NCBI GenBank assembly: GCA_965112735.1
Contig: OZ218953.1
Location: 682,001 to 746,000 of the forward strand
Origin: Phaeosaccion multiseriatum
Lineage: Eukaryota > Protista > Ochrophyta, other classes
Direction of reading: 5' to 3'
Length of the DNA: 64,000 nt
Position numbers and translations under genes: made by a program. This document shows, one piece after another, positions 4,702-62,740 of the stretch (the stretch's first letter is position 1; each line of letters opens with the position of its first letter). The notes under the pieces were generated by a model that had not been told where the DNA came from, did no database searches, and saw nothing but the letters and a program-made list of their open reading frames with translations.

Positions 4702-6320
4702 GAGGAGGAGGAGGAGGAGGAGGAGGAGGAGGAGGAGGATGATGATGATGATGAGGAGGAGGAGGAGGAGGAGGAGGAGGAGCAGGAGGAGGAGGCAAGC
4801 TCTTTTGTGACGTGCATGCAAATACCTCCCCCTTCTTCCCCTCGTCCCCTTCTCTTCCTCCCACCCCCCCTACCCTCCCATCACCTGCCCCTTGCCCGCA
4901 TGCTGCCTGTCTATCTGCCTGCCTGTCTGCCTGCCTGCCTGCCTGACTCCACCGACCTTCTTGTGTGCCTCGCTGCCTCCGTACTGCAGCGCGATCGAGT
5001 CTCCCACTTCAGAGTACATTTGCTTCAGCACGAGTACCACCTGCAGCAGTTGGTGATACGGCAAGCAGCAGCACCACCAAGCCACATGAGAGGGGTGTGT
5101 TCGGGGCGTATCGGGACTGGCGTCCTCACGCACGCCTTTCCGTGTTCGAGCAGTTTCAGTTGATGCTGTACCTACCTGATTTGATGCGTCCAGCGTTGGC
5201 GATGCACTCACTCCCATGACGAAGAGCTGCTGGCCGAGGGCATGCACCCTAGCCAAAGGGACAAGAGCAGCAGTGGGTGATACAGAATGTGCAGGAGTTG
5301 GTGATGCAGCAGCAGCAGCGGTGGCGGCAGCAAGGGGGGGGGGGCAGGGAAGAAGGGACGCGCACACTTCCGTCTTCGGCTTCCGTCGGTTTCGCTGCGA
5401 TTGGTCGACGATCGGTCGCCCAGAAAAGAGATCAATAGACCGAATTCATACACCGAATATATCAGACCTTCTTCTCTTCTCTTCGCAATCCAACACAACA
5501 CAACGCAAGGGCCCGCACACATGGGTAAGTGTCTGATAGATGCATCGGATCATTCAACCCCCCTACCCACCCACACTCACTCACCCTACGCTGAACTGCG
5601 CCACATTCGTCCTGTCCAAGCAGTCGATACAGTTGGTTCTTAGCACGCCCTTCTGCTCCATCGCCATCGGAATGCCGCCCCCTCCTCCTCCTCCTAAGCC
5701 CATTGAGGGTCCCATCGGAGGGAAGGGCACACTCTGGTTGTGAATACCGCCGCTGCTGCGACTACTACTGTTGACGGCGCTGACGCTGCCACTCCGCCTC
5801 CGTCTGCCTTCCACACCGTCGGGGGTGGCGCTTGCTCGGCGCGACGTGACATCGGCAGTGGAAGACCTTCGACGGTTGCCGGTACCACCTCTCTCCTCCC
5901 CCTTTTCGGCGGCAAACTTCACGGCGGATCTGCTTTCATCTCCACTTTGCCCTCCTCCGCCAACGCTGCCCTTCCTCCTGTCCTTACTGCCTCTGCTGCT
6001 GCTGCTGCTGCTTCCCTTACTCCTCTTGCCCAAGCCCTCTCCCCCACTTTTGCCTCTGCCTTTACCCTTGCCCAGCCCTCCCCCCCCTCCTCCTCCTCCT
6101 CCTCCTCGCTGCTTCTTCTTGGTCTTGTGGGTATGATCGCTGCCAAGCCTGCGCTGTGGGGCGCTGCAGAAGAGCCCTACTTGCTTCAGAGCCCAGTCCG
6201 CCACCACCTCAAGAGCCTACCCAACGCACAGACAGGTAGAGAGGCCGACAGACAGGCAGACACACAGACAGGCAGGCAGGCAGGCAGACAGACAAGAGAC
6301 GAGAGAGAGAGAGACATGAG

Positions 6321-51128: not shown

Positions 51129-51576
51129 CAGGAAACAGAGAGGATCGAAAAAAAAGGGATAGATGCCCACAGGAAACAGAGAGGATCGAAAAAAAAGGGA
51201 TAGATGCCCACAGGAAACAGAGAGGATCGAAAAAAAAGGGATAGATGCCCACAGGAAACAGAGAGGATCGAAAAAAAAGGGATAGATGCCCACAGGAAAC
51301 AGAGAGGATCGAAAAAAAAGGGATAGATGCCCACAGGAAACAGAGAGGATCGAAAAAAAAGGGATAGATGCCCACAGGAAACAGAGAGGATCGAAAAAAA
51401 AGGGATAGATGCCCACAGGAAACAGAGAGGATCGAAAAAAAAGGGATAGATGCCCACAGGAAACAGAGAGGATCGAAAAAAAAGGAGTAGATGCCCACAG
51501 GAAACAGAGAGGATCGAAAAAAAAGGGATAGATGCCCACAGGAAACAGAGAGGATCGAAAAAAAAGGAGTAGCTGC
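51129..51576. repeat. 41-bp tandem satellite, left arm (~11 units); an orphan unit lies at ~50770-50805
   Basis: Unit CACAGGAAACAGAGAGGATCGAAAAAAAAGGGATAGATGCC, head-to-tail with no spacers. Confidence 0.97.
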
Positions 51577-51824
51577 TGTGGTAGATTGTCCTGCCTGAGG
51601 GTTTCCGGTCACACATTCTGGGGTATAATAAGAATGTCGGTTTCCTAGGCACGCCCCGAGGGGGTTCAACGGCTCTAGCGTTTCACCCTCCTCTTTGTGG
51701 GCACAAGCTTTGCATCAGCAAGTAGTAGAGATATATTATCAATACGGACACTGACGCCCCACCATAGGCGCAGCATATACTTAGTCCAAACCCCTTAACG
51801 TTTCTACTATCTTAGCTTAGCACA
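51577..51824 (+). repeat. 5' LTR (248 bp)
   Basis: tgtggtagattgtcc...cttagcttagcaca. Confidence 0.97.
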
Positions 51825-51891
51825 GAACTAGTTCTCGCTTTAGAAAGGCTTTGGAGAAGGATTTTCTCGGACCGATTGGAGGAGCGACATC

Positions 51892-53226
51892 ATGGCGGTT
51901 CAAGGCATCATCATGAGGGACCCAACCCATTATCCGGAGATACGGACGCCTCTATCTGCGGAAGTCGTCAGCGAGTTCTTACTGCAGTACGATCAGTCCG
52001 CGCTCAGGGATAGGGACAAGCCGCTGGATATCCCCAGCATGGTGCAGCTCATCGAACCAGCACATCGTTTTGGAATAGCCATCGCCAATAAAGTGTCGGA
52101 GGCTCAGCTAACGTCCAAGATGGTACGGGATTACTTGGAGAGGTGGTTGAAGAAGAATCGCAGGGAGGACGTCAACGGCAACGCCACTCTTAATGAGATC
52201 ATCAGGAGGACGGTAATCGAGTACGACCCAGACCCTCTTCAGTTCAAGCACAATCTCCAGTATATGTGCCAGCAATACCTTCGCGCGATTCACGAGTCGG
52301 CAGCAAGGAAGGAGTACCTGAACTTGAACCCCACCGATACGAATTACCTTGGTCCGAACGGAAAGCACGCTGCCAAAGGGATGCAGCGAGGCTTACTCAC
52401 CATCGTCAAGAATTATGACCCATGCATGGAGAAGATGCTGGTGGACGCGTTCAAAGATGGACAGAAGGACTGGGGAGAGCATCACGGGGAGTGGATGGAG
52501 AAATTCGTCAAACACTTGTGCCAGTGGGCCACCATGAGAGCGGCAGCACGGCGTATCGGCGGTAAGGCCGAACATTTCCTTCCCGGACTCAAGGGTGACC
52601 AAGGAGCATCTGGAGGCGGCGGGGGGGGCGGTGGTGGGCAAGGCAAAGGTGCAGGCGGCAAGCGCAAGTGGCAGCAGGAGCAGCAGCCAAAGCGTACGGG
52701 TGCAGAGACCTCCTCGAAGGAGACAGCAGCGGGCAAAGAGACAGCCAGCAACCCATTGAAGAAGGCCCGTACTCCGAAGTGCTGGGCCTGCGACAAGCCG
52801 CATCGGATTGACGACTGCCCTACAACCACTGCCGAAGACAAGAAACGCATCAAGGCAGAGAAACAGAAGGCATGGGAGCAGAGGAAGGCTGAGGCGAAGA
52901 AACCGGGGGTGACGTCCGTCTCATCTTCTTCGGCTGCGGCAGGTGTTTCTTTGCCAGGGCCAGTTGCTATGGACCTCACGGGAGACCGCATGAGCGTGGT
53001 TCTCGTGAATGACACGACTCCGGAGGTGCGGATGTCGGCGCAAGCCCTGTTTGACAGCGGATGCGATGTGGGTATGGTCATGGGTGGTGACCTGGCTCGC
53101 ACGTGGGTCGGAAAGGGTGGTGGTGTACTAGAGGCCTGTGAGCCTTCGGAGTGCGTCACTGCTGCTGGACCTGTGACTGCCAACGAAGTGTTGTGCGGCA
53201 GTCACCTTGAGATTGTGCTAAGCTAA
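51892..53226 (+). CDS. gag: Gag plus the N-terminal half of the aspartic protease (cut short by a stop in the inserted LTR)
   Basis: Zinc knuckle CWACDKPHRIDDC; protease active site ALFDSG; the ORF runs 4 codons into the inverted LTR and stops at TAA 53224-53226. Confidence 0.9.
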   Translation: MAVQGIIMRDPTHYPEIRTPLSAEVVSEFLLQYDQSALRDRDKPLDIPSMVQLIEPAHRFGIAIANKVSEAQLTSKMVRDYLERWLKKNRREDVNGNATLNEIIRRTVIEYDPDPLQFKHNLQYMCQQYLRAIHESAARKEYLNLNPTDTNYLGPNGKHAAKGMQRGLLTIVKNYDPCMEKMLVDAFKDGQKDWGEHHGEWMEKFVKHLCQWATMRAAARRIGGKAEHFLPGLKGDQGASGGGGGGGGGQGKGAGGKRKWQQEQQPKRTGAETSSKETAAGKETASNPLKKARTPKCWACDKPHRIDDCPTTTAEDKKRIKAEKQKAWEQRKAEAKKPGVTSVSSSSAAAGVSLPGPVAMDLTGDRMSVVLVNDTTPEVRMSAQALFDSGCDVGMVMGGDLARTWVGKGGGVLEACEPSECVTAAGPVTANEVLCGSHLEIVLS

Positions 53227-53461
53227 GATAGTAGAAACGTTAAGGGGTTTGGACTAAGTATATGCTGCGCCTATGGTGGGGCGTCAGTGTCCGTATTGAT
53301 AATATATCTCTACTACTTGCTGATGCAAAGCTTGTGCCCACAAAGAGGAGGGTGAAACGCTAGAGCCGTTGAACCCCCTCGGGGCGTGCCTAGGAAACCG
53401 ACATTCTTATTATACCCCAGAATGTGTGACCGGAAACCCTCAGGCAGGACAATCTACCACA
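53214..53461 (-). mobile_element. Inverted solo LTR of the same family, nested in the protease coding region
   Basis: Reverse complement of the 248-bp LTR, flanked by a perfect 4-bp duplication AGAT (53210-53213 and 53462-53465). Confidence 0.96.
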
Positions 53462-56400
53462 AGATAGAGCTGAGTCATGGAAGCGTGAGTACAGCGCAGC
53501 TGGACAAGGAGTTCAGATCCATATTGGTTCTTGAGAGCTTGGGCAGCAGACTGATTCTGGGCCGGCCTTTGCATAAGGCACTGGGCTTGGAGTCTTTGAC
53601 TGAGCAGTTGCACAGAGTGCACGAGAAACGGTCGGAGGAGACCCTGCAGAGGGAGCGTGACGACGCTTCCCCTGCGACAGGGGCTGCCCCGACTAAGCAG
53701 CATAGTGTTGAGAAGAGCGTGTGTTCTATGGGCGTTGAGACCATACAAGACTATGCCGATTTTGAGGCAAGCAACTTCCCCGTGCAAGTATTGGGGGTAG
53801 GAGCGCAGGAGGTTGCGGCCGAGAGCCCCCCTCCTGTCGCCAGTGCAGAGGCACCAGAGGTTAGCGCCATTGGCGGCCAACCGCTTAATAATAAAGACCG
53901 TGAAGAGTGTGAAGGTGTACCGGATACTATTCAAGGGCCATCAGAGGGAGTTCCCCCTTCTGAGGCACGCCGTAGAGAGGTGCTAGGTCCCATTGTGGAC
54001 AAAGCAATCACTGATCATGATTTCCCTGCGGAGCTGAGAGAGCCAATGATGGAAGCTCTCTTAGAGTTCGACGTGTGGCGGGAAGAGTTGCTCTTTAGCG
54101 ACGGCCCCGCTAACGTAGAGCCAATGGAGGTGACGTTTACCAATAAGGTACCGAGCTCCCGTCTCCCCATAAGGCAACAAGGCGCAAAGGGTGCTTTTGT
54201 AAATGACTTTTGCAACAAGTTGATAGACAAAGGCCTGGGTTATAGCAACCCGCAGAGCGCTCATGGCAGCCCGGCGTTTGCAGTGGGCAAACCCGGCAAG
54301 CCAGGCAAGTACCGTATCGTCTGCGACTTTCGCGAAGTCAATGAAAAGGTACAGAAGGTCGATTTTGGGATGATGAACATTGAAGACGCCGTAGCCTCCA
54401 TGTTGGGTTGCCTATGGTTCATCGAGATAGATGGGGTTGACATGTATTGGCAATTCCCACTAGGCAAGTTGAGCCAAGTTGCTCACACCTATATATTCCC
54501 AAATGGCAAAGTGACGCCAACTCGAGTACCCCAGGGGGCTAAGAACTCGGGCGCTTACGTCCAAGGCCAGATGACCCACCTCTTTCGCAAAGAGTTGTGC
54601 AAGACCCACGCCGTCTACATTGACAACGTAGCGTACTGGGCAAAGGTGGGAGAGGAGATGGTGAGTCTCACTCGACTGACGATGAAGCGCCTCCACAGCG
54701 CCAACATCAAGATAGGATTGAGCTCCTTCCGCTTCGGCAAAGAGCTTAAGTTCCTAGGCCGCGTGCACGACCGACGCGGCACACGACATGACCCCGCCAG
54801 AGTGCAGGGCCTGACCAGTCTCGCGGCCCCAGAGACGGCTGGAGATTTGATGACTTTCCTCTGCAGCCTGCAGTGGTTTCATCGATACATCAAGGACTTC
54901 GCTAAGCTAGTGGGTCCTTTGAACGCGCTGTTGAACAAAGCCCTCGGGCAGGCTAACGCTAAGCCTCATCAGCACAAGCGCTCCAAGGCAGTGGCCAAGA
55001 CGATTCCATTGGCTTCTGTGGGGTGGGACACAGAGCACGACGACGCTTTCTTCCAGATCAAGCGCGTTCTTGCACAGAACACGGTGCTGTCGCACCCAGA
55101 CCCAACCAAACTGGCACTGGTATTCCCAGATGCTAGTGACCTCTACTGGGGATGTATGATTACATACATAGACCCCAAAGAGCTGTGCCTTCCGGTACAT
55201 GAGATGAACCACATCCCGGTGGCCTTCGGCTCAGGCGCCTTTGAAGGCGCAGAGCTGAGGCGTGCCACCATCGACAAGGAAGGAGACGCGACACTCCGAG
55301 GCTTGATCCAGAACGAGTACGCTTTGGTCGGGGCACAGAAAGTGCACATCTTTTGCGACCATCGCAACTTGGCGTTCATGATGAGCAACGACAGCAAGTA
55401 CCCTGGCATGACTAAGCCTATGAGGGACAGGCTGCAGCGTCAGGCCGTGCGCCTTCAGAGCTTTGACTATGTCATTGTCCACTTCCCTGGTCATCTCCAT
55501 GATTGGGCCGACCCCATTAGCAGGCGGTACACGCACCCGGTGAGCCTCACCCCTAGTGTGCTCGCCTTGGGCAAGTTTGGACCCATGCAAGTGTTTGACA
55601 CTATGTGTGACGACTTCACTTGGCCCTCCACCACTGAGATTGCCAGTCTGCAGGCCGACGCTCTTCAGGAGCTCCAGCAGGCTAGCAAGGAGGTGGGAGA
55701 GAACGGGCGCCGCCTGCTCCTCTCATCAGTTGGCGACGACGGGTTGATTCGAGCGTGCCATCCGACGAGCAACCCCGCTGACAGCACCCGCATTTGGATT
55801 CCCTCGGTGGGAGCCAAGGCGGAAGACATGCACCTGAGGCTGTGTGTGACTGGCCATCAGGGTATGATGGGCCATCAGGGAGAGACAAACACCTTGAGTG
55901 CTATTAAGGAGAAGTTCATTTGGCACTCGCTAGACAAGGACGTGCGAAGCCTCGTTCAGAACTGTCTCCACTGCCTCACCAACGGCAAGGGCGAGAGAGT
56001 GCCTCGCCCCCTGCTAGCTCAATGGCACGCCACTGGACCCCAGCAACTCATCTGGTTTGACTTCGTCAAGATTGGCGATGGAGTCATATGGGCAGAGTCC
56101 CCAGAAGGGTTCATGAAGCTTCAGGTCAAGCAAGTGCTGTGCATCTTTGATGATTTTTCATCATTGTCAATGTATGAGCCATGTTTGGAAGCTACTGCAC
56201 GAGTGTGTGCACGCGGTCTGTTGCGCTGGTTCGCACAGCATGGCGTAGTGCCCAGGTGGCAGAGTGACCGAGGCAGTCATTTCCTAAATGAGGTGATACG
56301 TGAGTTAAGTCAGCTCTTGCGGTGCAACCACCACTTTGTGGTGGCACACAACCCATACAGTCGAGGATTGGGCGAGCGTGGTGTACAGACACTGCAGAAG

Positions 56401-57330
56401 ATCATGAGATCAATGATGTCTGAACTACGGCAGCCGCCCGAGACATGGCCGCAGCTACTGCCAGTGATGGAGGCTGTTGAGAACAGCTCCAACAAGAGCA
56501 GTCGGTCTAACTTGTCTCCCATCCAGCTGCACAGTGGTCACGTACCACAGCGGCCTCTCGACACGATTTTGATCCACGACGCGGATCGGATGCAAAAGGT
56601 TCGGCTACTGCAGCTGACCCCGGCGCAGAGAGACACCCTTGCGACACAACTCCATCAGAGGAAGGAGGGGCAGCGTGCCGAGGCGGCGCGCCAACTGACT
56701 ACCCTCCGCGATCACAAGCGCGATGGCATCAACCAGAGGTTGATGAGTGGCAGACGTGGTGCAGAGCATCGTCAGGACTTGGCCAGAGCTAAGCAGCTCA
56801 ACAGCGAGACGCTGTTTCAGGTCGGAGTCTACGTACTCGTTGCAACAGTAGGGCCTACAAGCAAGATACTAGGCAAGTGGCATGGGCCCTGCCGAGTGCT
56901 TGAAGCCCTTGAGCAACACGTGTACAAGGTGGAGGAGCTTGTGGGCAAGAAGCGTACCTATGAGGTACACATCAGCCGGCTCCGCTACTACTGCGGTGCT
57001 CACGTTAACGTCACCACCGACGTACTTCAACAGATTTCGTATAACACCCAAGACTTTGTGGTGGAGGCCTTTGAAGGCCTCGTTAAGCACGCAGATGATT
57101 CATGGCACGTCATTGTTAAGTGGCGTGGCTTTGACGCCCTCGAGAATAGCGAGGAGCCCATCGAGGCGCTGCACGAAGATACTCCACGTTTACTGGAGAC
57201 CTACCTGCAGCACCATCAGGACAAGCAGTTGATCAGCGCAGTCCGAGCCTATCTGCGCAAGACTACGACGCGATCGGCTACTAAGCCGCTGCGCTCCGCG
57301 CGCACACGAAAGCGGACACAAACTAGATGA
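53462..57330 (+). CDS. pol: Pol: protease C-half, reverse transcriptase, RNase H, integrase, chromodomain
   Basis: LILGRP; YRIVCDFREVN; EIDGVDMYWQ; RVPQGAKNS; YIDN; KFLGR; RNase H PDAS..DKEG..CDHRNL..WADPISR; integrase H..H..CLHC, WFDFV, QSDRGSHF, GLGER; chromodomain VIVKWRGFDALENSEEP. Same frame as gag. Confidence 0.93.
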
Positions 57331-57369
57331 TAAACACACTTACTTCCCAGTTGGCTCGAACTATCGCTT

Positions 57370-57377
57370 GGGGGTAG
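57370..57377 (+). other. Polypurine tract
   Basis: GGGGGTAG immediately upstream of the 3' LTR. Confidence 0.7.
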
Positions 57378-57625
57378 TGTGGTAGATTGTCCTGCCTGAG
57401 GGTTTCCGGTCACACATTCTGGGGTATAATAAGAATGTCGGTTTCCTAGGCACGCCCCGAGGGGGTTCAACGGCTCTAGCGTTTCACCCTCCTCTTTGTG
57501 GGCACAAGCTTTGCATCAGCAAGTAGTAGAGATATATTATCAATACGGACACTGACGCCCCACCATAGGCGCAGCATATACTTAGTCCAAACCCCTTAAC
57601 GTTTCTACTATCTTAGCTTAGCACA
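57378..57625 (+). repeat. 3' LTR (248 bp)
   Basis: Appears identical to the 5' LTR. Confidence 0.97.
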
Positions 57626-58717
57626 ATGCCCACAGGAAACAGAGAGGATCGAAAAAAAAGGGATAGATGCCCACAGGAAACAGAGAGGATCGAAAAAAAA
57701 GGGATAGATGCCCACAGGAAACAGAGAGGATCGAAAAAAAAGGGATAGATGCCCACAGGAAACAGAGAGGATCGAAAAAAAAGGAGTAGATGCCCACAGG
57801 AAACAGAGAGGATCGAAAAAAAAGGGATAGATGCCCACAGGAAACAGAGAGGATCGAAAAAACGGGATAGATGCCCACAGGAAACAGAGAGGATCGAAAA
57901 AAAAGGGATAGATGCCCACAGGAAACAGAGAGGATCGAAAAAAAAGGGATAGATGCCCACAGGAAACAGAGAGGATCGAAAAAAAAGGGATAGATGCCCA
58001 CAGGAAACAGAGAGGATCGAAAAAAAAGGGATAGATGCCCACAGGAAACAGAGAGGATCGAAAAAAAAAGGGATAGATGCCCACAGGAAACAGAGAGGAT
58101 CGAAAAAAAGGGATAGATGCCCACAGGAAACAGAGAGGATCGAAAAAAAAGGGATAGATGCCCACAGGAAACAGAGAGGATCGAAAAAAAAGGGATAGAT
58201 GCCCACAGGAAACAGAGAGGATCGAAAAAAAAGGAGTAGATGCCCACAGGAAACAGAGAGGATCGAAAAAAAAGGGATAGATGCCCACAGGAAACAGAGA
58301 GGATCGAAAAAAAAGGGATAGATGCCCACAGGAAACAGAGAGGATCGAAAAAAAGGGATAGATGCCCACAGGAAACAGAGAGGATCGAAAAAAAAGGGAT
58401 AGATGCCCACAGGAAACAGAGAGGATCGAAAAAAAAGGGATAGATGCCCACAGGAAACAGAGAGGATCGAAAAAAAAGGAGTAGATGCCCACAGGAAACA
58501 GAGAGGATCGAAAAAAAAGGAATAGATGCCCACAGGAAACAGAGAGGATCGAAAAAAAAGGGATAGATGCCCACAGGAAACAGAGAGGATCGAAAAAAAA
58601 GGGATAGATGCCCACAGGAAACAGAGAGGATCGAAAAAAAAGGGATAGATGCCCACAGGAAACAGAGAGGATCGAAAAAAAAGGGATAGATGCCCACAGG
58701 AAACAGAGAGGATCGAA
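57626..58717. repeat. 41-bp tandem satellite, right arm (~26-27 units)
   Basis: Same unit; A-run varies 7-9; GGAGTAG variant at ~57783, 58233 and 58478. Confidence 0.97.
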
Positions 58718-59141
58718 CTCCCGACCTTTCGCTGACTTATCTCTGTCGAAATTCGAAGGCGAACATGATATCCACTACACTATGCTTGCCAGCAGATGAA
58801 ATTTCTTGCTATTTAATTGAAAAAACATGTTTTTTTGTCGTCTCATCTCCCCTTTAAGCTGGCCATGTTTATTTGTCGTCTCATCTCCCCTTCAAGCTGG
58901 CCTTACTAAAGCTGGCCTTAGAGGGAGCCGCAAATGTTTTTTTTTGTCTCATCTTACCTGTGGAAATTCGCCTCCAGACTGGCCTTAGTAAAGCCTAGGC
59001 CTAGAGGGAGCCGCAAATGTTTTTTTTTTCTCGTCTCGCCTATAAGTTCGGCGCCAGACGGCCTGCTTCCTGCTTCTGGGCCCTCAGCCAGAAGCATGTC
59101 AGGGGCCGACCTGTAATCAGATAATCTTGTACAGGGTCGAC

Positions 59142-59805
59142 TCCCCCCCTCCCTCCCTCCCTCCCTCCCTCCCTCCCTCCCTCCCTCCCTCCCTCTTTCC
59201 CTCCCTTTCCCCTCCCTCTCTCCCTCTCTCCCTCTCTCCCTCTCTCCCTCTCTTCCTCTCTCCCTCCCTCTCTCCCTCTCTCCCTCTCTCCCTCACCCCC
59301 ATCGCTCCCTCCCTCCCTCTCCTCCCTCCCTCCCTCCCTCCCTCCCTCCCTCCCTCCCTCCCTCCCTCCCTTCCTCCCTTCCTCCCTGCCTCCCTCCCTC
59401 CCTCCCTCCCTCCCTCCCTCCCTCCCTCCCTCCCTCCCTCCCTCCCTCCCTCCCTCCCTCCCTCCCTCCCTCCCTCCCTCCCTCCCTCCCTCCCTCCCTC
59501 CCTCCCTCCCTCCCTCCCTCCCTCCCTCCCTCCCTCCCTCCCTCCCTCCCTCCCTCCCTCCCTCCCTCCCTCCCTCCCTCCCTCCCTCCCTCCCCTCCCT
59601 CCCTCCCTCCCTCCCTCCCTCCCTCCCTCCCTCCCTCCCTCCCTCCCTCCCTCCCTCCCTCCCTCCCTCCCTCCCTCCCTCCCTCCCCCTCGCCCTCTCT
59701 CCCTCCCTCCCTCCCCCCCCCCCCCTCGCCCTCCCTCCCTCCCTCCCTTCCTTCCTTCCTCACTCCCTCCCTCCAACCCTCCCTCCTTCCCTCCCTCCCT
59801 CCCTC
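59142..59805. repeat. ~660-bp (CCCT)n polypyrimidine/polypurine tract
   Basis: Near-pure ccct tetramer run. Confidence 0.95.
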
Positions 59806-60949: not shown

Positions 60950-62740
60950 ACCTGTCGTCGCTCTCCCCCCTCGCGGTCGTGGCCCTCCTGACTGTCATCC
61001 TCCTCCTCTGTGAAGCCGTGAAGGGCTGACAATGCGAGGTGCCCGAACCAAATCTCACACGCCCCGTTCTCCTTCAGGTGGTGCTGCTGGGGATGGGGTG
61101 GATGGCAGCGGGTCGGATCGCCGTGGGATGGCAGTGGAAGTAGAAGTGGGTGGCAGCGGGTCGGATGGCAGGGGATGGGGGGTATGGCAGTGGATGAGGT
61201 GGAGTGGTCGGGTAGGGTGGCGTGGCAGTGATACCCTACACTGACCCTGACACCCAACGGACTGTCCTGACCCCTGACACCCACCTCCAACACATCATCC
61301 CCACTGAGGTTTGGGTAAGAAAGTCCTCCTCTATTAGCAACACGGAAACTCAAAATACCGAGCACCCACAAGACTTCTTCTCATACCTATCACTGGTCCT
61401 CACACCCACCTCCAACACTCGTCCAAGCTGAGATTGGGTACAGTAAGTCTTCCTCTGTAAGGGAAAACACGCCTCGCTTTCACTCCCTTACTCTCACTCA
61501 CTCACTCACACACCTCACCCCTCACACCTCACTCCTCGCCCCACACCCCTCACACCTGACACCTCACCCCTCACACCTCACCACTCACCCCTCACCCCTC
61601 AAACCTCACCCCGCACACCCCACACCTCACACCTCACACCTCACCCCTCACACCTCACTCCTCACCCCTCACACCTCACTCCTCACACCTCACACCTCAC
61701 ACCTCACACCTCACCCCGCACACCTCAGCCACCCCTCACACCTCGCACCTCACACCTCACCCCTCACACCTCACTCCTCACCCCTCACACCTCACTCCTC
61801 ACCCCTCACACCTCACTCCTCACCCTGCACACCTCACCCCTCACACCTTCACACCTCACCCCTCACCCCTCACTCCTCACCCCTCACACCTCAATCCTCA
61901 CCCCTAACACCTCACCCCGCACACCTCACCCCTCACACCTCACCCCGCACACCTCACCCCTCACACCTCAAACCTCACCCCGCACACTCTCATACCCTTG
62001 CTCACCTCACTTTCCTCGGGCACCGTCTCGCGGATCGCCGCCAACTGATCTGGAGTAACCCCTCAGCAGTAGAAGAAGCCCTTGGTCATGGTGCCGTGTC
62101 CGTGGGAGTAGATGCTGACACCTCTTTCCCCAACCTTGCCCAATGCGACGGTACCCACTGCCTTCTCCACGCGGACCTGATGGCAGTGGATGAGATGCAT
62201 GTCAGTAAATGGGATGGATGGCAGTGGATGGGGAGTATTTAGGTATTTAGAGGCGTGTGGGAGGAGCTGTGCGGGAGGCGTCTGACTGACTGACTGACTG
62301 ACTGACTGAACGCCCACCCATTCACTCACCCAACCACGCACCCACCATCCACCCACCCATTGACTTACGAACCCCCGACTCACCGTTAGTATTGAGCACG
62401 CTGACACTCTTCTCGGTGAGCGGGTGGTGGTCTGTGAGTGAGAGTGAGAGAGAGAGAGCAAGTCAGTGCGAGTATACAATCGTAGACTGTCCGGTGTACT
62501 GAAAGAAGCCTCCTTCCTTCCTTCCTTCCTTCCTTGTATAATACAGTTTCAAACTAGAAGCCTGAAAGGAGGAGACAATCTTGCTCTGCAACCACTTCTC
62601 CTCAGACTCATGCAAGTGCCCTTGAGCCACGAGCTCTCGAACATGGTCCATGGCTCCAGCAAGCATGATGCGAGTGCACTGAAACCGAGGCTACTGCAGC
62701 TTCTGCCGTGGCTTGGTGGTGGTGATGGTGGTGGTGCCTG
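60950..62740 (-). pseudogene. Possible spliced gene or pseudogene of unknown function (exon-like segments ~60951-61075, 62005-62176, 62550-62740)
   Basis: Codon-like segments bounded by AG/GT and separated by intron-like microsatellite tracts; in-frame TGA at 62063-62065; no recognisable domain. Confidence 0.3.
61490..61990. repeat. (CCTCACA/CCTCACC)n heptamer-like satellite
   Basis: About 500 bp of ctcacac/ctcaccc units. Confidence 0.9.

What the first reader, a model, noticed from the sequence alone, without database searches (positions are those of the whole stretch)
53210..53465. Three-LTR retrotransposon: an identical inverted solo LTR splits its own protease
Seen: three 248-bp LTRs with no difference I can detect. 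The middle one is inverted, with a perfect AGAT duplication. Removing LTR plus one AGAT restores a single Gag-Pol frame (..GSHLEI-ELSHGS.., ~1728 aa). Established: solo LTRs come from LTR-LTR recombination of a nested insertion. Inference: insertion, self-insertion and collapse all happened before any LTR mutation. The resulting inverted repeats can yield fold-back dsRNA or an antisense gag transcript (a self-silencing locus). They could also let the gag or pol segment invert by recombination.
Basis: partly seen in the sequence, partly recalled or inferred. Interest (0 to 1): 0.75.

Follow-up and report, generated by a model that had tools for sequence, protein, structure and literature searches.

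The report
Retrotransposon broken by a sibling's remnant
A very young copy of a jumping gene in this alga was hit by another copy of its own family, of which only one end-repeat remains; it is a tidy but ordinary dead transposon, and nothing shows that it silences its relatives.

Summary
Three 248-bp LTRs (51577-51824 +, 53214-53461 -, 57378-57625 +) are 100% identical. The inverted middle one is flanked by a perfect AGAT duplication and adds 252 bp (84 codons, two in-frame stops) to a Gag-Pol frame that is otherwise open.

The host is a Ty3/gypsy element with a likely chromodomain, inserted in a local 41-bp minisatellite. The genome (67 Mb, 22 contigs, an alga by earlier notes) holds about 20 copies. 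Normal copies are about 5797 bp, have 4-bp duplications, and two carry an uninterrupted 1728-aa ORF that reads straight through the insertion site.

Both junctions of the inverted LTR occur only here, so the three-LTR form has not spread. At least 10 LTRs at five loci are identical, so a third identical LTR only says the family is young. A sibling donor is as likely as the copy itself.

Best reading: an inverted same-family nested insertion collapsed to a solo LTR by LTR-LTR recombination. That is textbook biology.

Fold-back RNA, antisense gag and segment inversion are structurally possible. Piwi, RNase III and RdRP genes exist in the genome. None of these ideas can be tested here.

Interest is low.

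The parts
51129..51576 (.). 41-bp minisatellite, left part of the array that the element split
   Evidence: 10.7 units, 98% matches; the array is found only at this locus in the genome
51573..51576 (+). left copy of the outer target-site duplication, CTGC (one mismatch to the right copy ATGC)
   Evidence: no satellite unit carries CTGC at this place, while the ATGC form occurs 4 times
51577..51824 (+). 5' LTR, 248 bp, TGTG...CACA ends
51892..53213 (+). Gag and N-terminal part of the presumed protease: zinc knuckle 52780-52818, LFDSGC 53047-53064. The ORF then runs on into the inverted LTR and stops at 53224-53226.
   Evidence: no Pfam family matched
53210..53213 (+). left copy of the inner target-site duplication AGAT
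53214..53461 (-). inverted solo LTR, 248 bp, identical to both outer LTRs; carries two stops in the Gag-Pol frame
   Evidence: junctions unique in the genome
53462..53465 (+). right copy of the inner target-site duplication AGAT
53467..57330 (+). rest of Pol in the same frame: ILGRPL 53554-53571, RT 54289-54759, RNase H 55024-55464, integrase zinc finger 55855-55983, chromodomain-like 57106-57213
57365..57377 (+). purine-rich tract (..TGGGGGTAG) abutting the 3' LTR, kept in other copies
57378..57625 (+). 3' LTR, 248 bp
57626..57629 (+). right copy of the outer target-site duplication, ATGC
57626..58717 (.). 41-bp minisatellite, right part of the array
   Evidence: 26.7 units, 97% matches

Best explanation
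A recently transposed Ty3/gypsy (chromovirus-type) LTR retrotransposon landed in a 41-bp minisatellite. Soon afterwards a second cDNA of the same, still uniform family was integrated in the opposite orientation into its protease-coding region, making the 4-bp AGAT duplication. The two LTRs of the nested copy are direct repeats of each other. They then recombined, deleting about 5.5 kb and leaving one inverted solo LTR. The result is a dead copy: its Gag-Pol frame is cut by two stops inside the LTR. Shown: the structure, the duplication, the empty site in all paralogues, the uniqueness of the junctions, and the youth and uniformity of the family. Inferred: the full-length nested intermediate and its collapse. 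Also inferred is that the collapse was fast because an inverted full-length sibling makes kilobase-long inverted repeats, which are known to be break-prone.
For: The inverted LTR is full length and 100% identical, with TG..CA ends and an AGAT duplication. The family makes 4-bp duplications in 10 of 12 full elements. The spacing is 5801 against about 5549, a difference of 252. About 12 other copies run straight through the site, and both junctions occur once in 67 Mb. Identical LTRs occur at four other loci, so any sibling could be the donor. Solo-LTR formation happens in this family: L049/L050 is a solo LTR with a GGGG duplication. A second element (L031, C14) carries an extra partial LTR inside its CAAC duplication, so LTR-level rearrangement of same-family DNA recurs. 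Same-family nesting ('autoinsertion') is documented, mostly for Ty3/gypsy (PMC6911290). Inverted repeats are described as a source of chromosome instability in PMC10164571 (abstract).
Against: No full nested intermediate is seen. Ordinary solo LTRs of this family are rare (one event against about 17 full or near-full copies), so a quick collapse is not the default fate. The outer duplication has one mismatch (CTGC/ATGC). No reads were available to confirm the assembly.
Confidence: 0.8

Rival explanations
1. The locus works as a trigger of silencing. Read-through RNA from the 5' LTR folds back on the inverted LTR, or the inverted LTR's promoter drives antisense gag RNA. The resulting double-stranded RNA feeds RNAi against the whole family, as Mu killer does. 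This concerns function and is compatible with the origin given above.
For: There are perfect 248-nt inverted arms, 1389 and 3916 nt apart. The duplex of the full arms is computed at about -522 kcal/mol. The genome has Piwi/Argonaute, RNase III and RdRP domain hits. Hairpin RNA from nested or tandem transposon insertions as a silencing trigger is cited for Mutator in 10.1101/2024.05.27.596030.
Against: There is no expression or small-RNA data. The U3/R/U5 limits are unknown, so the transcribed part of each arm is unknown. The family looks recently active: many identical LTR pairs and two intact 1728-aa ORFs. That gives no sign that it has been shut down. It is a single copy of the structure.
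Confidence: 0.1
2. The solo LTR was born solo. An aberrant linear DNA consisting of a single LTR (for example a plus-strand strong-stop-type product made double-stranded) was integrated directly by integrase, with no nested full-length stage.
For: The end state (LTR plus 4-bp duplication) would be identical. This route removes the need for a fast collapse in a family in which solo LTRs are rare.
Against: I know of no described route that gives an LTR-only DNA with two correct integrase ends; a strong-stop product would carry extra primer-binding-site bases. This rests on my own knowledge and was not tested here.
Confidence: 0.05
3. Assembly artefact: a full nested element was collapsed to one LTR, or an LTR was wrongly patched in.
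For: No reads were available to me. All three LTRs are identical, which is where assemblers can err.
Against: The junctions show an exact 4-bp duplication of the family's normal length and exact LTR ends, which an assembly error would not create. The assembly has 22 contigs for 67 Mb. It resolves many near-identical 5.8-kb copies at separate loci.
Confidence: 0.04
4. The inverted LTR is removed from the RNA as an intron (GT at 53215, AG at 53463, 249 nt, in phase), so the copy still makes Gag-Pol.
For: GT and AG are there and 249 is a multiple of 3. Introns of a Piwi gene in this genome appear to be of similar size, about 150-270 nt.
Against: The donor is GTGCTA and the acceptor AAG. The four donors read in the Piwi gene are GTGAGT, GTCAGT, GTAAGT and GTGCGT, and the two acceptors read are both CAG. 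That is a very small sample. 44 different GT..AG pairs within about 70 nt of the insert would also keep the frame open, so the in-phase GT..AG is expected by chance. It follows from the TGTG end of every LTR plus the AGAT duplication.
Confidence: 0.02

Closest known systems
Solo LTR left by a nested same-family insertion ('autoinsertion') in an LTR retrotransposon
   Same: It is a full LTR with its own target-site duplication inside another element of the same family. Same-family nesting is documented, more often for Ty3/gypsy (PMC6911290). Solo LTRs arise by recombination between the two LTRs of one element (textbook knowledge).
   Different: Here all three LTRs are still identical and the nested LTR is inverted and sits in coding sequence. 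PMC6911290 reports that coding regions are not commonly hit.
Chromoviruses (Ty3/gypsy elements with a chromodomain after integrase)
   Same: The order is Gag zinc knuckle, DSG motif, RT, RNase H, integrase zinc finger/core, chromodomain-like end. The duplication is 4 bp, as reported for Galadriel among chromoviruses (PMC6911290).
   Different: The chromodomain match is below Pfam's cut-off (20.8 against 25.1 bits). No Pfam protease match was found. No canonical TGG primer-binding site follows the LTR. The clade was not determined.
Mu killer of maize (inverted duplication of a transposon that makes hairpin RNA and silences the family)
   Same: An inverted repeat of transposon sequence lies within one potential transcription unit, in a genome with RNAi-type genes (cited in 10.1101/2024.05.27.596030).
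   Different: Mu killer is a DNA-transposon derivative with demonstrated hairpin RNA and heritable silencing. Here nothing beyond the geometry is shown.
Three-LTR recombinant elements (LTR-internal-LTR-internal-LTR) formed by unequal recombination between elements
   Same: More than two LTRs belong to one composite.
   Different: Those have all LTRs in one orientation and two internal regions (my own knowledge, not checked in a paper here). This one has a single internal region cut by an inverted LTR with its own duplication. The element at C14:2433764-2439766 (L031) is closer to that type.

Membership tests
Ty3/gypsy LTR retrotransposon (chromovirus type) | Two direct LTRs with TG..CA ends flanked by a short target-site duplication | tested here: met
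   248-bp LTRs with TGTG..CACA ends. Perfect 4-bp duplications in 10 of 12 family members. This copy has CTGC/ATGC (3 of 4).
Ty3/gypsy LTR retrotransposon (chromovirus type) | Pol order RT, RNase H, then integrase (integrase last, unlike Ty1/copia) | tested here: met
   RVT_1 at 275-431, RT_RNaseH at 520-666, Integrase_H2C2 at 797-839 of the second piece; rve core weak (E 0.0014, below cut-off) in the intact copy L035.
Ty3/gypsy LTR retrotransposon (chromovirus type) | Chromodomain at the C-terminus of integrase | tested here: inconclusive
   PF00385 at E 4e-4 to 5e-4, 20.4-20.8 bits against a cut-off of 25.1, at the expected place.
Ty3/gypsy LTR retrotransposon (chromovirus type) | Retropepsin-type protease between Gag and RT | tested here: inconclusive
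   LFDSGC and ILGRPL motifs lie 83 residues apart, upstream of RT. No Pfam hit even at E 10. No PDB sequence hit. The AlphaFold model is unusable (pLDDT 41).
Ty3/gypsy LTR retrotransposon (chromovirus type) | Primer-binding site after the 5' LTR and polypurine tract before the 3' LTR | tested here: inconclusive
   The purine tract TGGGGGTAG is kept in copies. After the 5' LTR lies the palindrome GAACTAGTTC and no TGG start. No complement of 8 nt or more to the LTR was found that would suggest self-priming. tRNA matching was not done.
Solo LTR derived from a nested insertion | Complete LTR, no adjoining internal sequence, flanked by a duplication of the family's length | tested here: met
Solo LTR derived from a nested insertion | Empty site in paralogous or allelic copies | tested here: met
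   all other copies are continuous across the site, and the junctions are unique.
Solo LTR derived from a nested insertion | A full-length nested precursor existed | not testable with these tools
Hairpin-RNA silencing trigger (Mu killer type) | Inverted duplication of transposon sequence | tested here: met
   248-nt arms, 100% complementary.
Hairpin-RNA silencing trigger (Mu killer type) | Transcript spanning both arms, small RNAs from them, and silencing of the family in trans | not testable with these tools
   No expression or small-RNA data were available. Only the presence of Piwi, RNase III and RdRP domain hits in the genome was shown.

The most novel reading that the evidence does not exclude
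The inverted solo LTR turns this one copy into a natural hairpin or antisense source that feeds the alga's RNAi pathway and starts silencing of a currently active chromovirus family. That would be a retrotransposon counterpart of Mu killer caught at birth in a stramenopile alga.
Probability: 0.07. Interest if true: 0.55.

Novelty: new member of a known kind. Interest (0 to 1): 0.17.

Why it matters
As it stands it matters little. It is a clean, datable example of same-family nesting followed by solo-LTR formation. It shows that this alga has a very young, probably still active Ty3/gypsy family: identical LTR pairs, intact 1728-aa ORFs, and mosaic copies that point to recombination between sibling RNAs. 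It would gain interest only if RNA and small-RNA data showed that this single locus produces double-stranded RNA against the family. It would then be a natural starting point for studying how transposon silencing begins in a non-model alga.

Tried and rejected
(1) Propagation of the three-LTR form. Both junction probes match fully only in the window, so this is rejected.

The exact-sequence look-up found neither the 444-aa piece nor the intact 1728-aa protein in the collection.

(3) Protease identity. Pfam at E 0.1 and at E 10 gave nothing. The PDB sequence search gave only a chance hit. The single-sequence AlphaFold model had pLDDT 41 and was not searched further. The call rests on motifs only.

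(4) Satellite as a genome-wide target. The 41-bp unit is found only at this locus, so it is not a family-wide target.

(5) Outer duplication mismatch explained by a satellite variant. No unit carries the CTGC form.

(6) Self-priming like Tf1. No complement of 8 nt or more between the post-LTR bases and the LTR.

The splice sites are weak compared with four real introns, and 44 alternative in-phase GT..AG pairs exist, so this is judged unlikely.

(8) The crossover of the L034-like/L031-like mosaic coinciding with the inverted LTR. It can only be placed between 52627 and 53825, where the three copies are identical, so nothing can be concluded.

(9) The two large protein searches were not used, because the family scans had already settled the element's class.
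Full report
OBSERVATION. The repeat search over 49-60 kb finds one direct pair of 248 nt at 100% identity (51577-51824 and 57378-57625). It also finds an inverted copy at 53214-53461 that is 100% complementary to both. The sequence shows AGAT at 53210-13 and again at 53462-65, directly against the LTR ends TGTG...CACA. ORF1 (51892-53226) and ORF2 (53386-57330) are in the same frame. The insert is 248 + 4 = 252 nt, which is 84 codons, and it brings two in-frame stops.

WHAT THE ELEMENT IS. The second piece carries RT, RNase H, the integrase zinc finger and a sub-threshold chromodomain, in that order. An intact sibling adds a weak integrase core. The first piece has a Gag zinc knuckle and an LFDSGC motif. 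The second piece starts 30 residues before ILGRPL. This is the architecture of a Ty3/gypsy element of the chromovirus type.

The claim that the insertion lies in the protease rests on those two motifs and their position only. Pfam found nothing even at E 10. A PDB sequence search gave only a chance hit. A single-sequence AlphaFold model was too poor to use (pLDDT 41).

The element sits inside a 41-bp minisatellite that exists only at this locus. Its outer duplication is ATGC on the right and CTGC on the left. No satellite unit has the CTGC form, so one base differs in the left copy.

THE FAMILY IN THE GENOME. The window is C4:682001-746000 of a 67-Mb, 22-contig assembly. Earlier notes of this scan call the organism an alga, and one calls it a stramenopile; I did not test that. 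The contig is not human-like: it has 59% G+C and an active chromovirus family.

The LTR matches 42 places (a lower bound), which corresponds to about 20 elements. I fetched 24 loci. These are the main results:
- Normal full elements are 5783-5803 bp with an LTR-to-LTR spacing of about 5549. This copy is 6049 bp, which is 5797 + 252.
- Ten of twelve full elements have perfect 4-bp duplications.
- Nine of twelve have identical LTR pairs.
- L035 and L039 carry one uninterrupted ORF of 1728 aa.
- LTRs identical to those of the window occur at C14:2433964/2439519, C14:2395562, C9:3253233/3258768 and C9:215555/221103.

IS THE THREE-LTR FORM PROPAGATED? No. Probes of 131 nt across each junction match fully only in the window. 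Everywhere else they split into an LTR half and an internal half. About a dozen other copies run straight through the site.

ORIGIN. An exact full-length LTR with a duplication of the family's normal length is the signature of integrase, not of an assembler or of illegitimate recombination. The accepted route to a solo LTR is recombination between the two LTRs of one element. For an inverted nested copy, its own LTRs are the only direct repeats available, so the expected product is exactly what is seen.

The donor cannot be named. The window copy's own LTR sequence is shared with at least four other loci, so 'self-insertion' is not established.

The host copy is itself a mosaic. It is identical to L034 (C9) from its start to 53945. 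It is nearly identical to L031 (C14) from 52627 to its end, with 2 substitutions and 1 single-base indel. This is what recombination between co-packaged sibling RNAs gives. The crossover lies somewhere in 52627-53825 and cannot be tied to the LTR.

HOW SURPRISING IS THE SPEED? Ordinary solo LTRs of this family are rare. I found one event, a solo LTR with a GGGG duplication. It is present twice because its surroundings are duplicated at 98% identity (L049/L050). This compares with about 17 full or near-full copies. A quick collapse is therefore not the default.

A plausible reason for it here is an inference, not a result. A full inverted sibling inside an element creates inverted repeats of 1.4 and 3.9 kb only a few kilobases apart. 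Inverted repeats are described as triggers of chromosome instability (PMC10164571, abstract). A break there, repaired between the flanking direct LTRs, would give the solo LTR.

Same-family rearrangement at LTR level recurs in this family. L031 has 5' LTR, internal region, 3' LTR, one T, and then LTR positions 50-248, all inside one CAAC duplication.

With the family covering roughly 0.2% of the genome, even one or two same-family hits among about 20 insertions exceed a uniform expectation of about 0.04. This is a rough estimate from lower-bound counts. It would fit targeting of already marked transposon chromatin by a chromodomain, or simple clustering: at least eight copies lie in C14:2.39-2.67 Mb. 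Same-family 'autoinsertions' are documented, mainly for Ty3/gypsy (PMC6911290).

FUNCTIONAL IDEAS. The geometry allows three things:
- fold-back pairing of a read-through RNA;
- antisense gag transcription from the inverted LTR;
- inversion of either segment by recombination between inverted arms.

The genome has Piwi/Argonaute, RNase III and RdRP domain hits. Hairpin RNA from nested or tandem insertions as a silencing trigger is an established idea (Mu killer, cited in 10.1101/2024.05.27.596030). Nothing here shows transcription, small RNAs or silencing. The family looks active rather than shut down. In the assembly both segments are in the collinear orientation.

THE SPLICING LEAD. An earlier first-reader note on the same stretch (s1-326369) suggested that the LTR is spliced out (GT at 53215, AG at 53463, 249 nt). 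The donor GTGCTA and acceptor AAG compare badly with the sites I read in a Piwi gene of this genome. There the four donors are GTGAGT, GTCAGT, GTAAGT and GTGCGT, and the two acceptors are both CAG. That sample is small. In addition, 44 GT..AG pairs near the insert would keep the frame open. I rate this reading unlikely.

A note on method. To count those pairs, my script joined the two flanks in memory. The same count follows from frame arithmetic, which is how I should have done it. The two pieces were always searched apart, and the intact protein used for searches is the natural one of L035.

The exact-sequence look-up found neither protein. The two large protein searches were not used, because the family scans had settled the class.

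VERDICT. The origin reading is supported, with 'sibling' as likely as 'self'. The structure has not been copied to any other place in the genome. The functional speculation is untested and conceptually known. This is an ordinary, very young, dead nested copy, and its interest is low.

Noticed in passing
L031 (G000:C14:2433764-2439766, minus strand): A second element with three identical LTR pieces: 5' LTR, internal region, 3' LTR, one T, then LTR positions 50-248, all enclosed by one CAAC duplication. It may come from a same-orientation nested insertion into the 3' LTR collapsed by recombination, or from an error of reverse transcription. The junction does not show a clean 4-bp duplication.
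   Followed up: partly
window 51577-57625 compared with L034 (C9:215555-221350) and L031: The host copy is a mosaic. It is identical to L034 up to 53945 and nearly identical to L031 from 52627 onward. Other copies share block-wise patches of variants, which suggests frequent recombination between sibling RNAs or gene conversion.
   Followed up: partly
window 51573-51576 against 57626-57629; L032 flanks (C14:2395562-2402013): In two of twelve elements the 4-bp duplication differs only at the first base of the left copy (CTGC/ATGC here, CCCC/TCCC in L032), although their LTRs carry no change or almost none. This may be a footprint of gap repair at integration rather than later mutation.
   Followed up: partly
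window 51825-51834 and the same place in other copies: Right after the 5' LTR comes the palindrome GAACTAGTTC instead of a canonical TGG primer-binding site. No complement to the LTR was found that would suggest self-priming. The primer of this family is unknown.
   Followed up: partly
L032 (C14), element positions about 5117-5763: A roughly 650-bp insertion with perfect terminal inverted repeats of at least 40 bp and an apparent GGAG duplication sits inside a sibling element. It looks like a foldback or MITE-like DNA element.
   Followed up: no
L049 (C12:461514) and L050 (C9:143409): The same solo LTR with the same GGGG duplication and 98% identical flanks over 1.9 kb lies on two contigs. This is a segmental duplication that post-dates the solo LTR.
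   Followed up: partly
G000:C14:2.39-2.67 Mb: At least eight copies or fragments of the family cluster here, including an older 93% subfamily with three LTRs at 2484198, 2488487 and 2492957. This may be a transposon-rich or centromeric region.
   Followed up: no
window 51129-51576 and 57626-58717; 59141-59805; 61509-61996: A 41-bp minisatellite of about 37 units is found only at this locus. It is followed by a 665-bp (CTCC)n tract and a 488-bp (CACACCT)n tract.
   Followed up: partly
L048 (G000:C1:4479255-4479662): An older LTR (95%) has, about 100 bp upstream, an inverted copy of its last 57 bases together with the same flanking bases. This is a small local inverted duplication.
   Followed up: no
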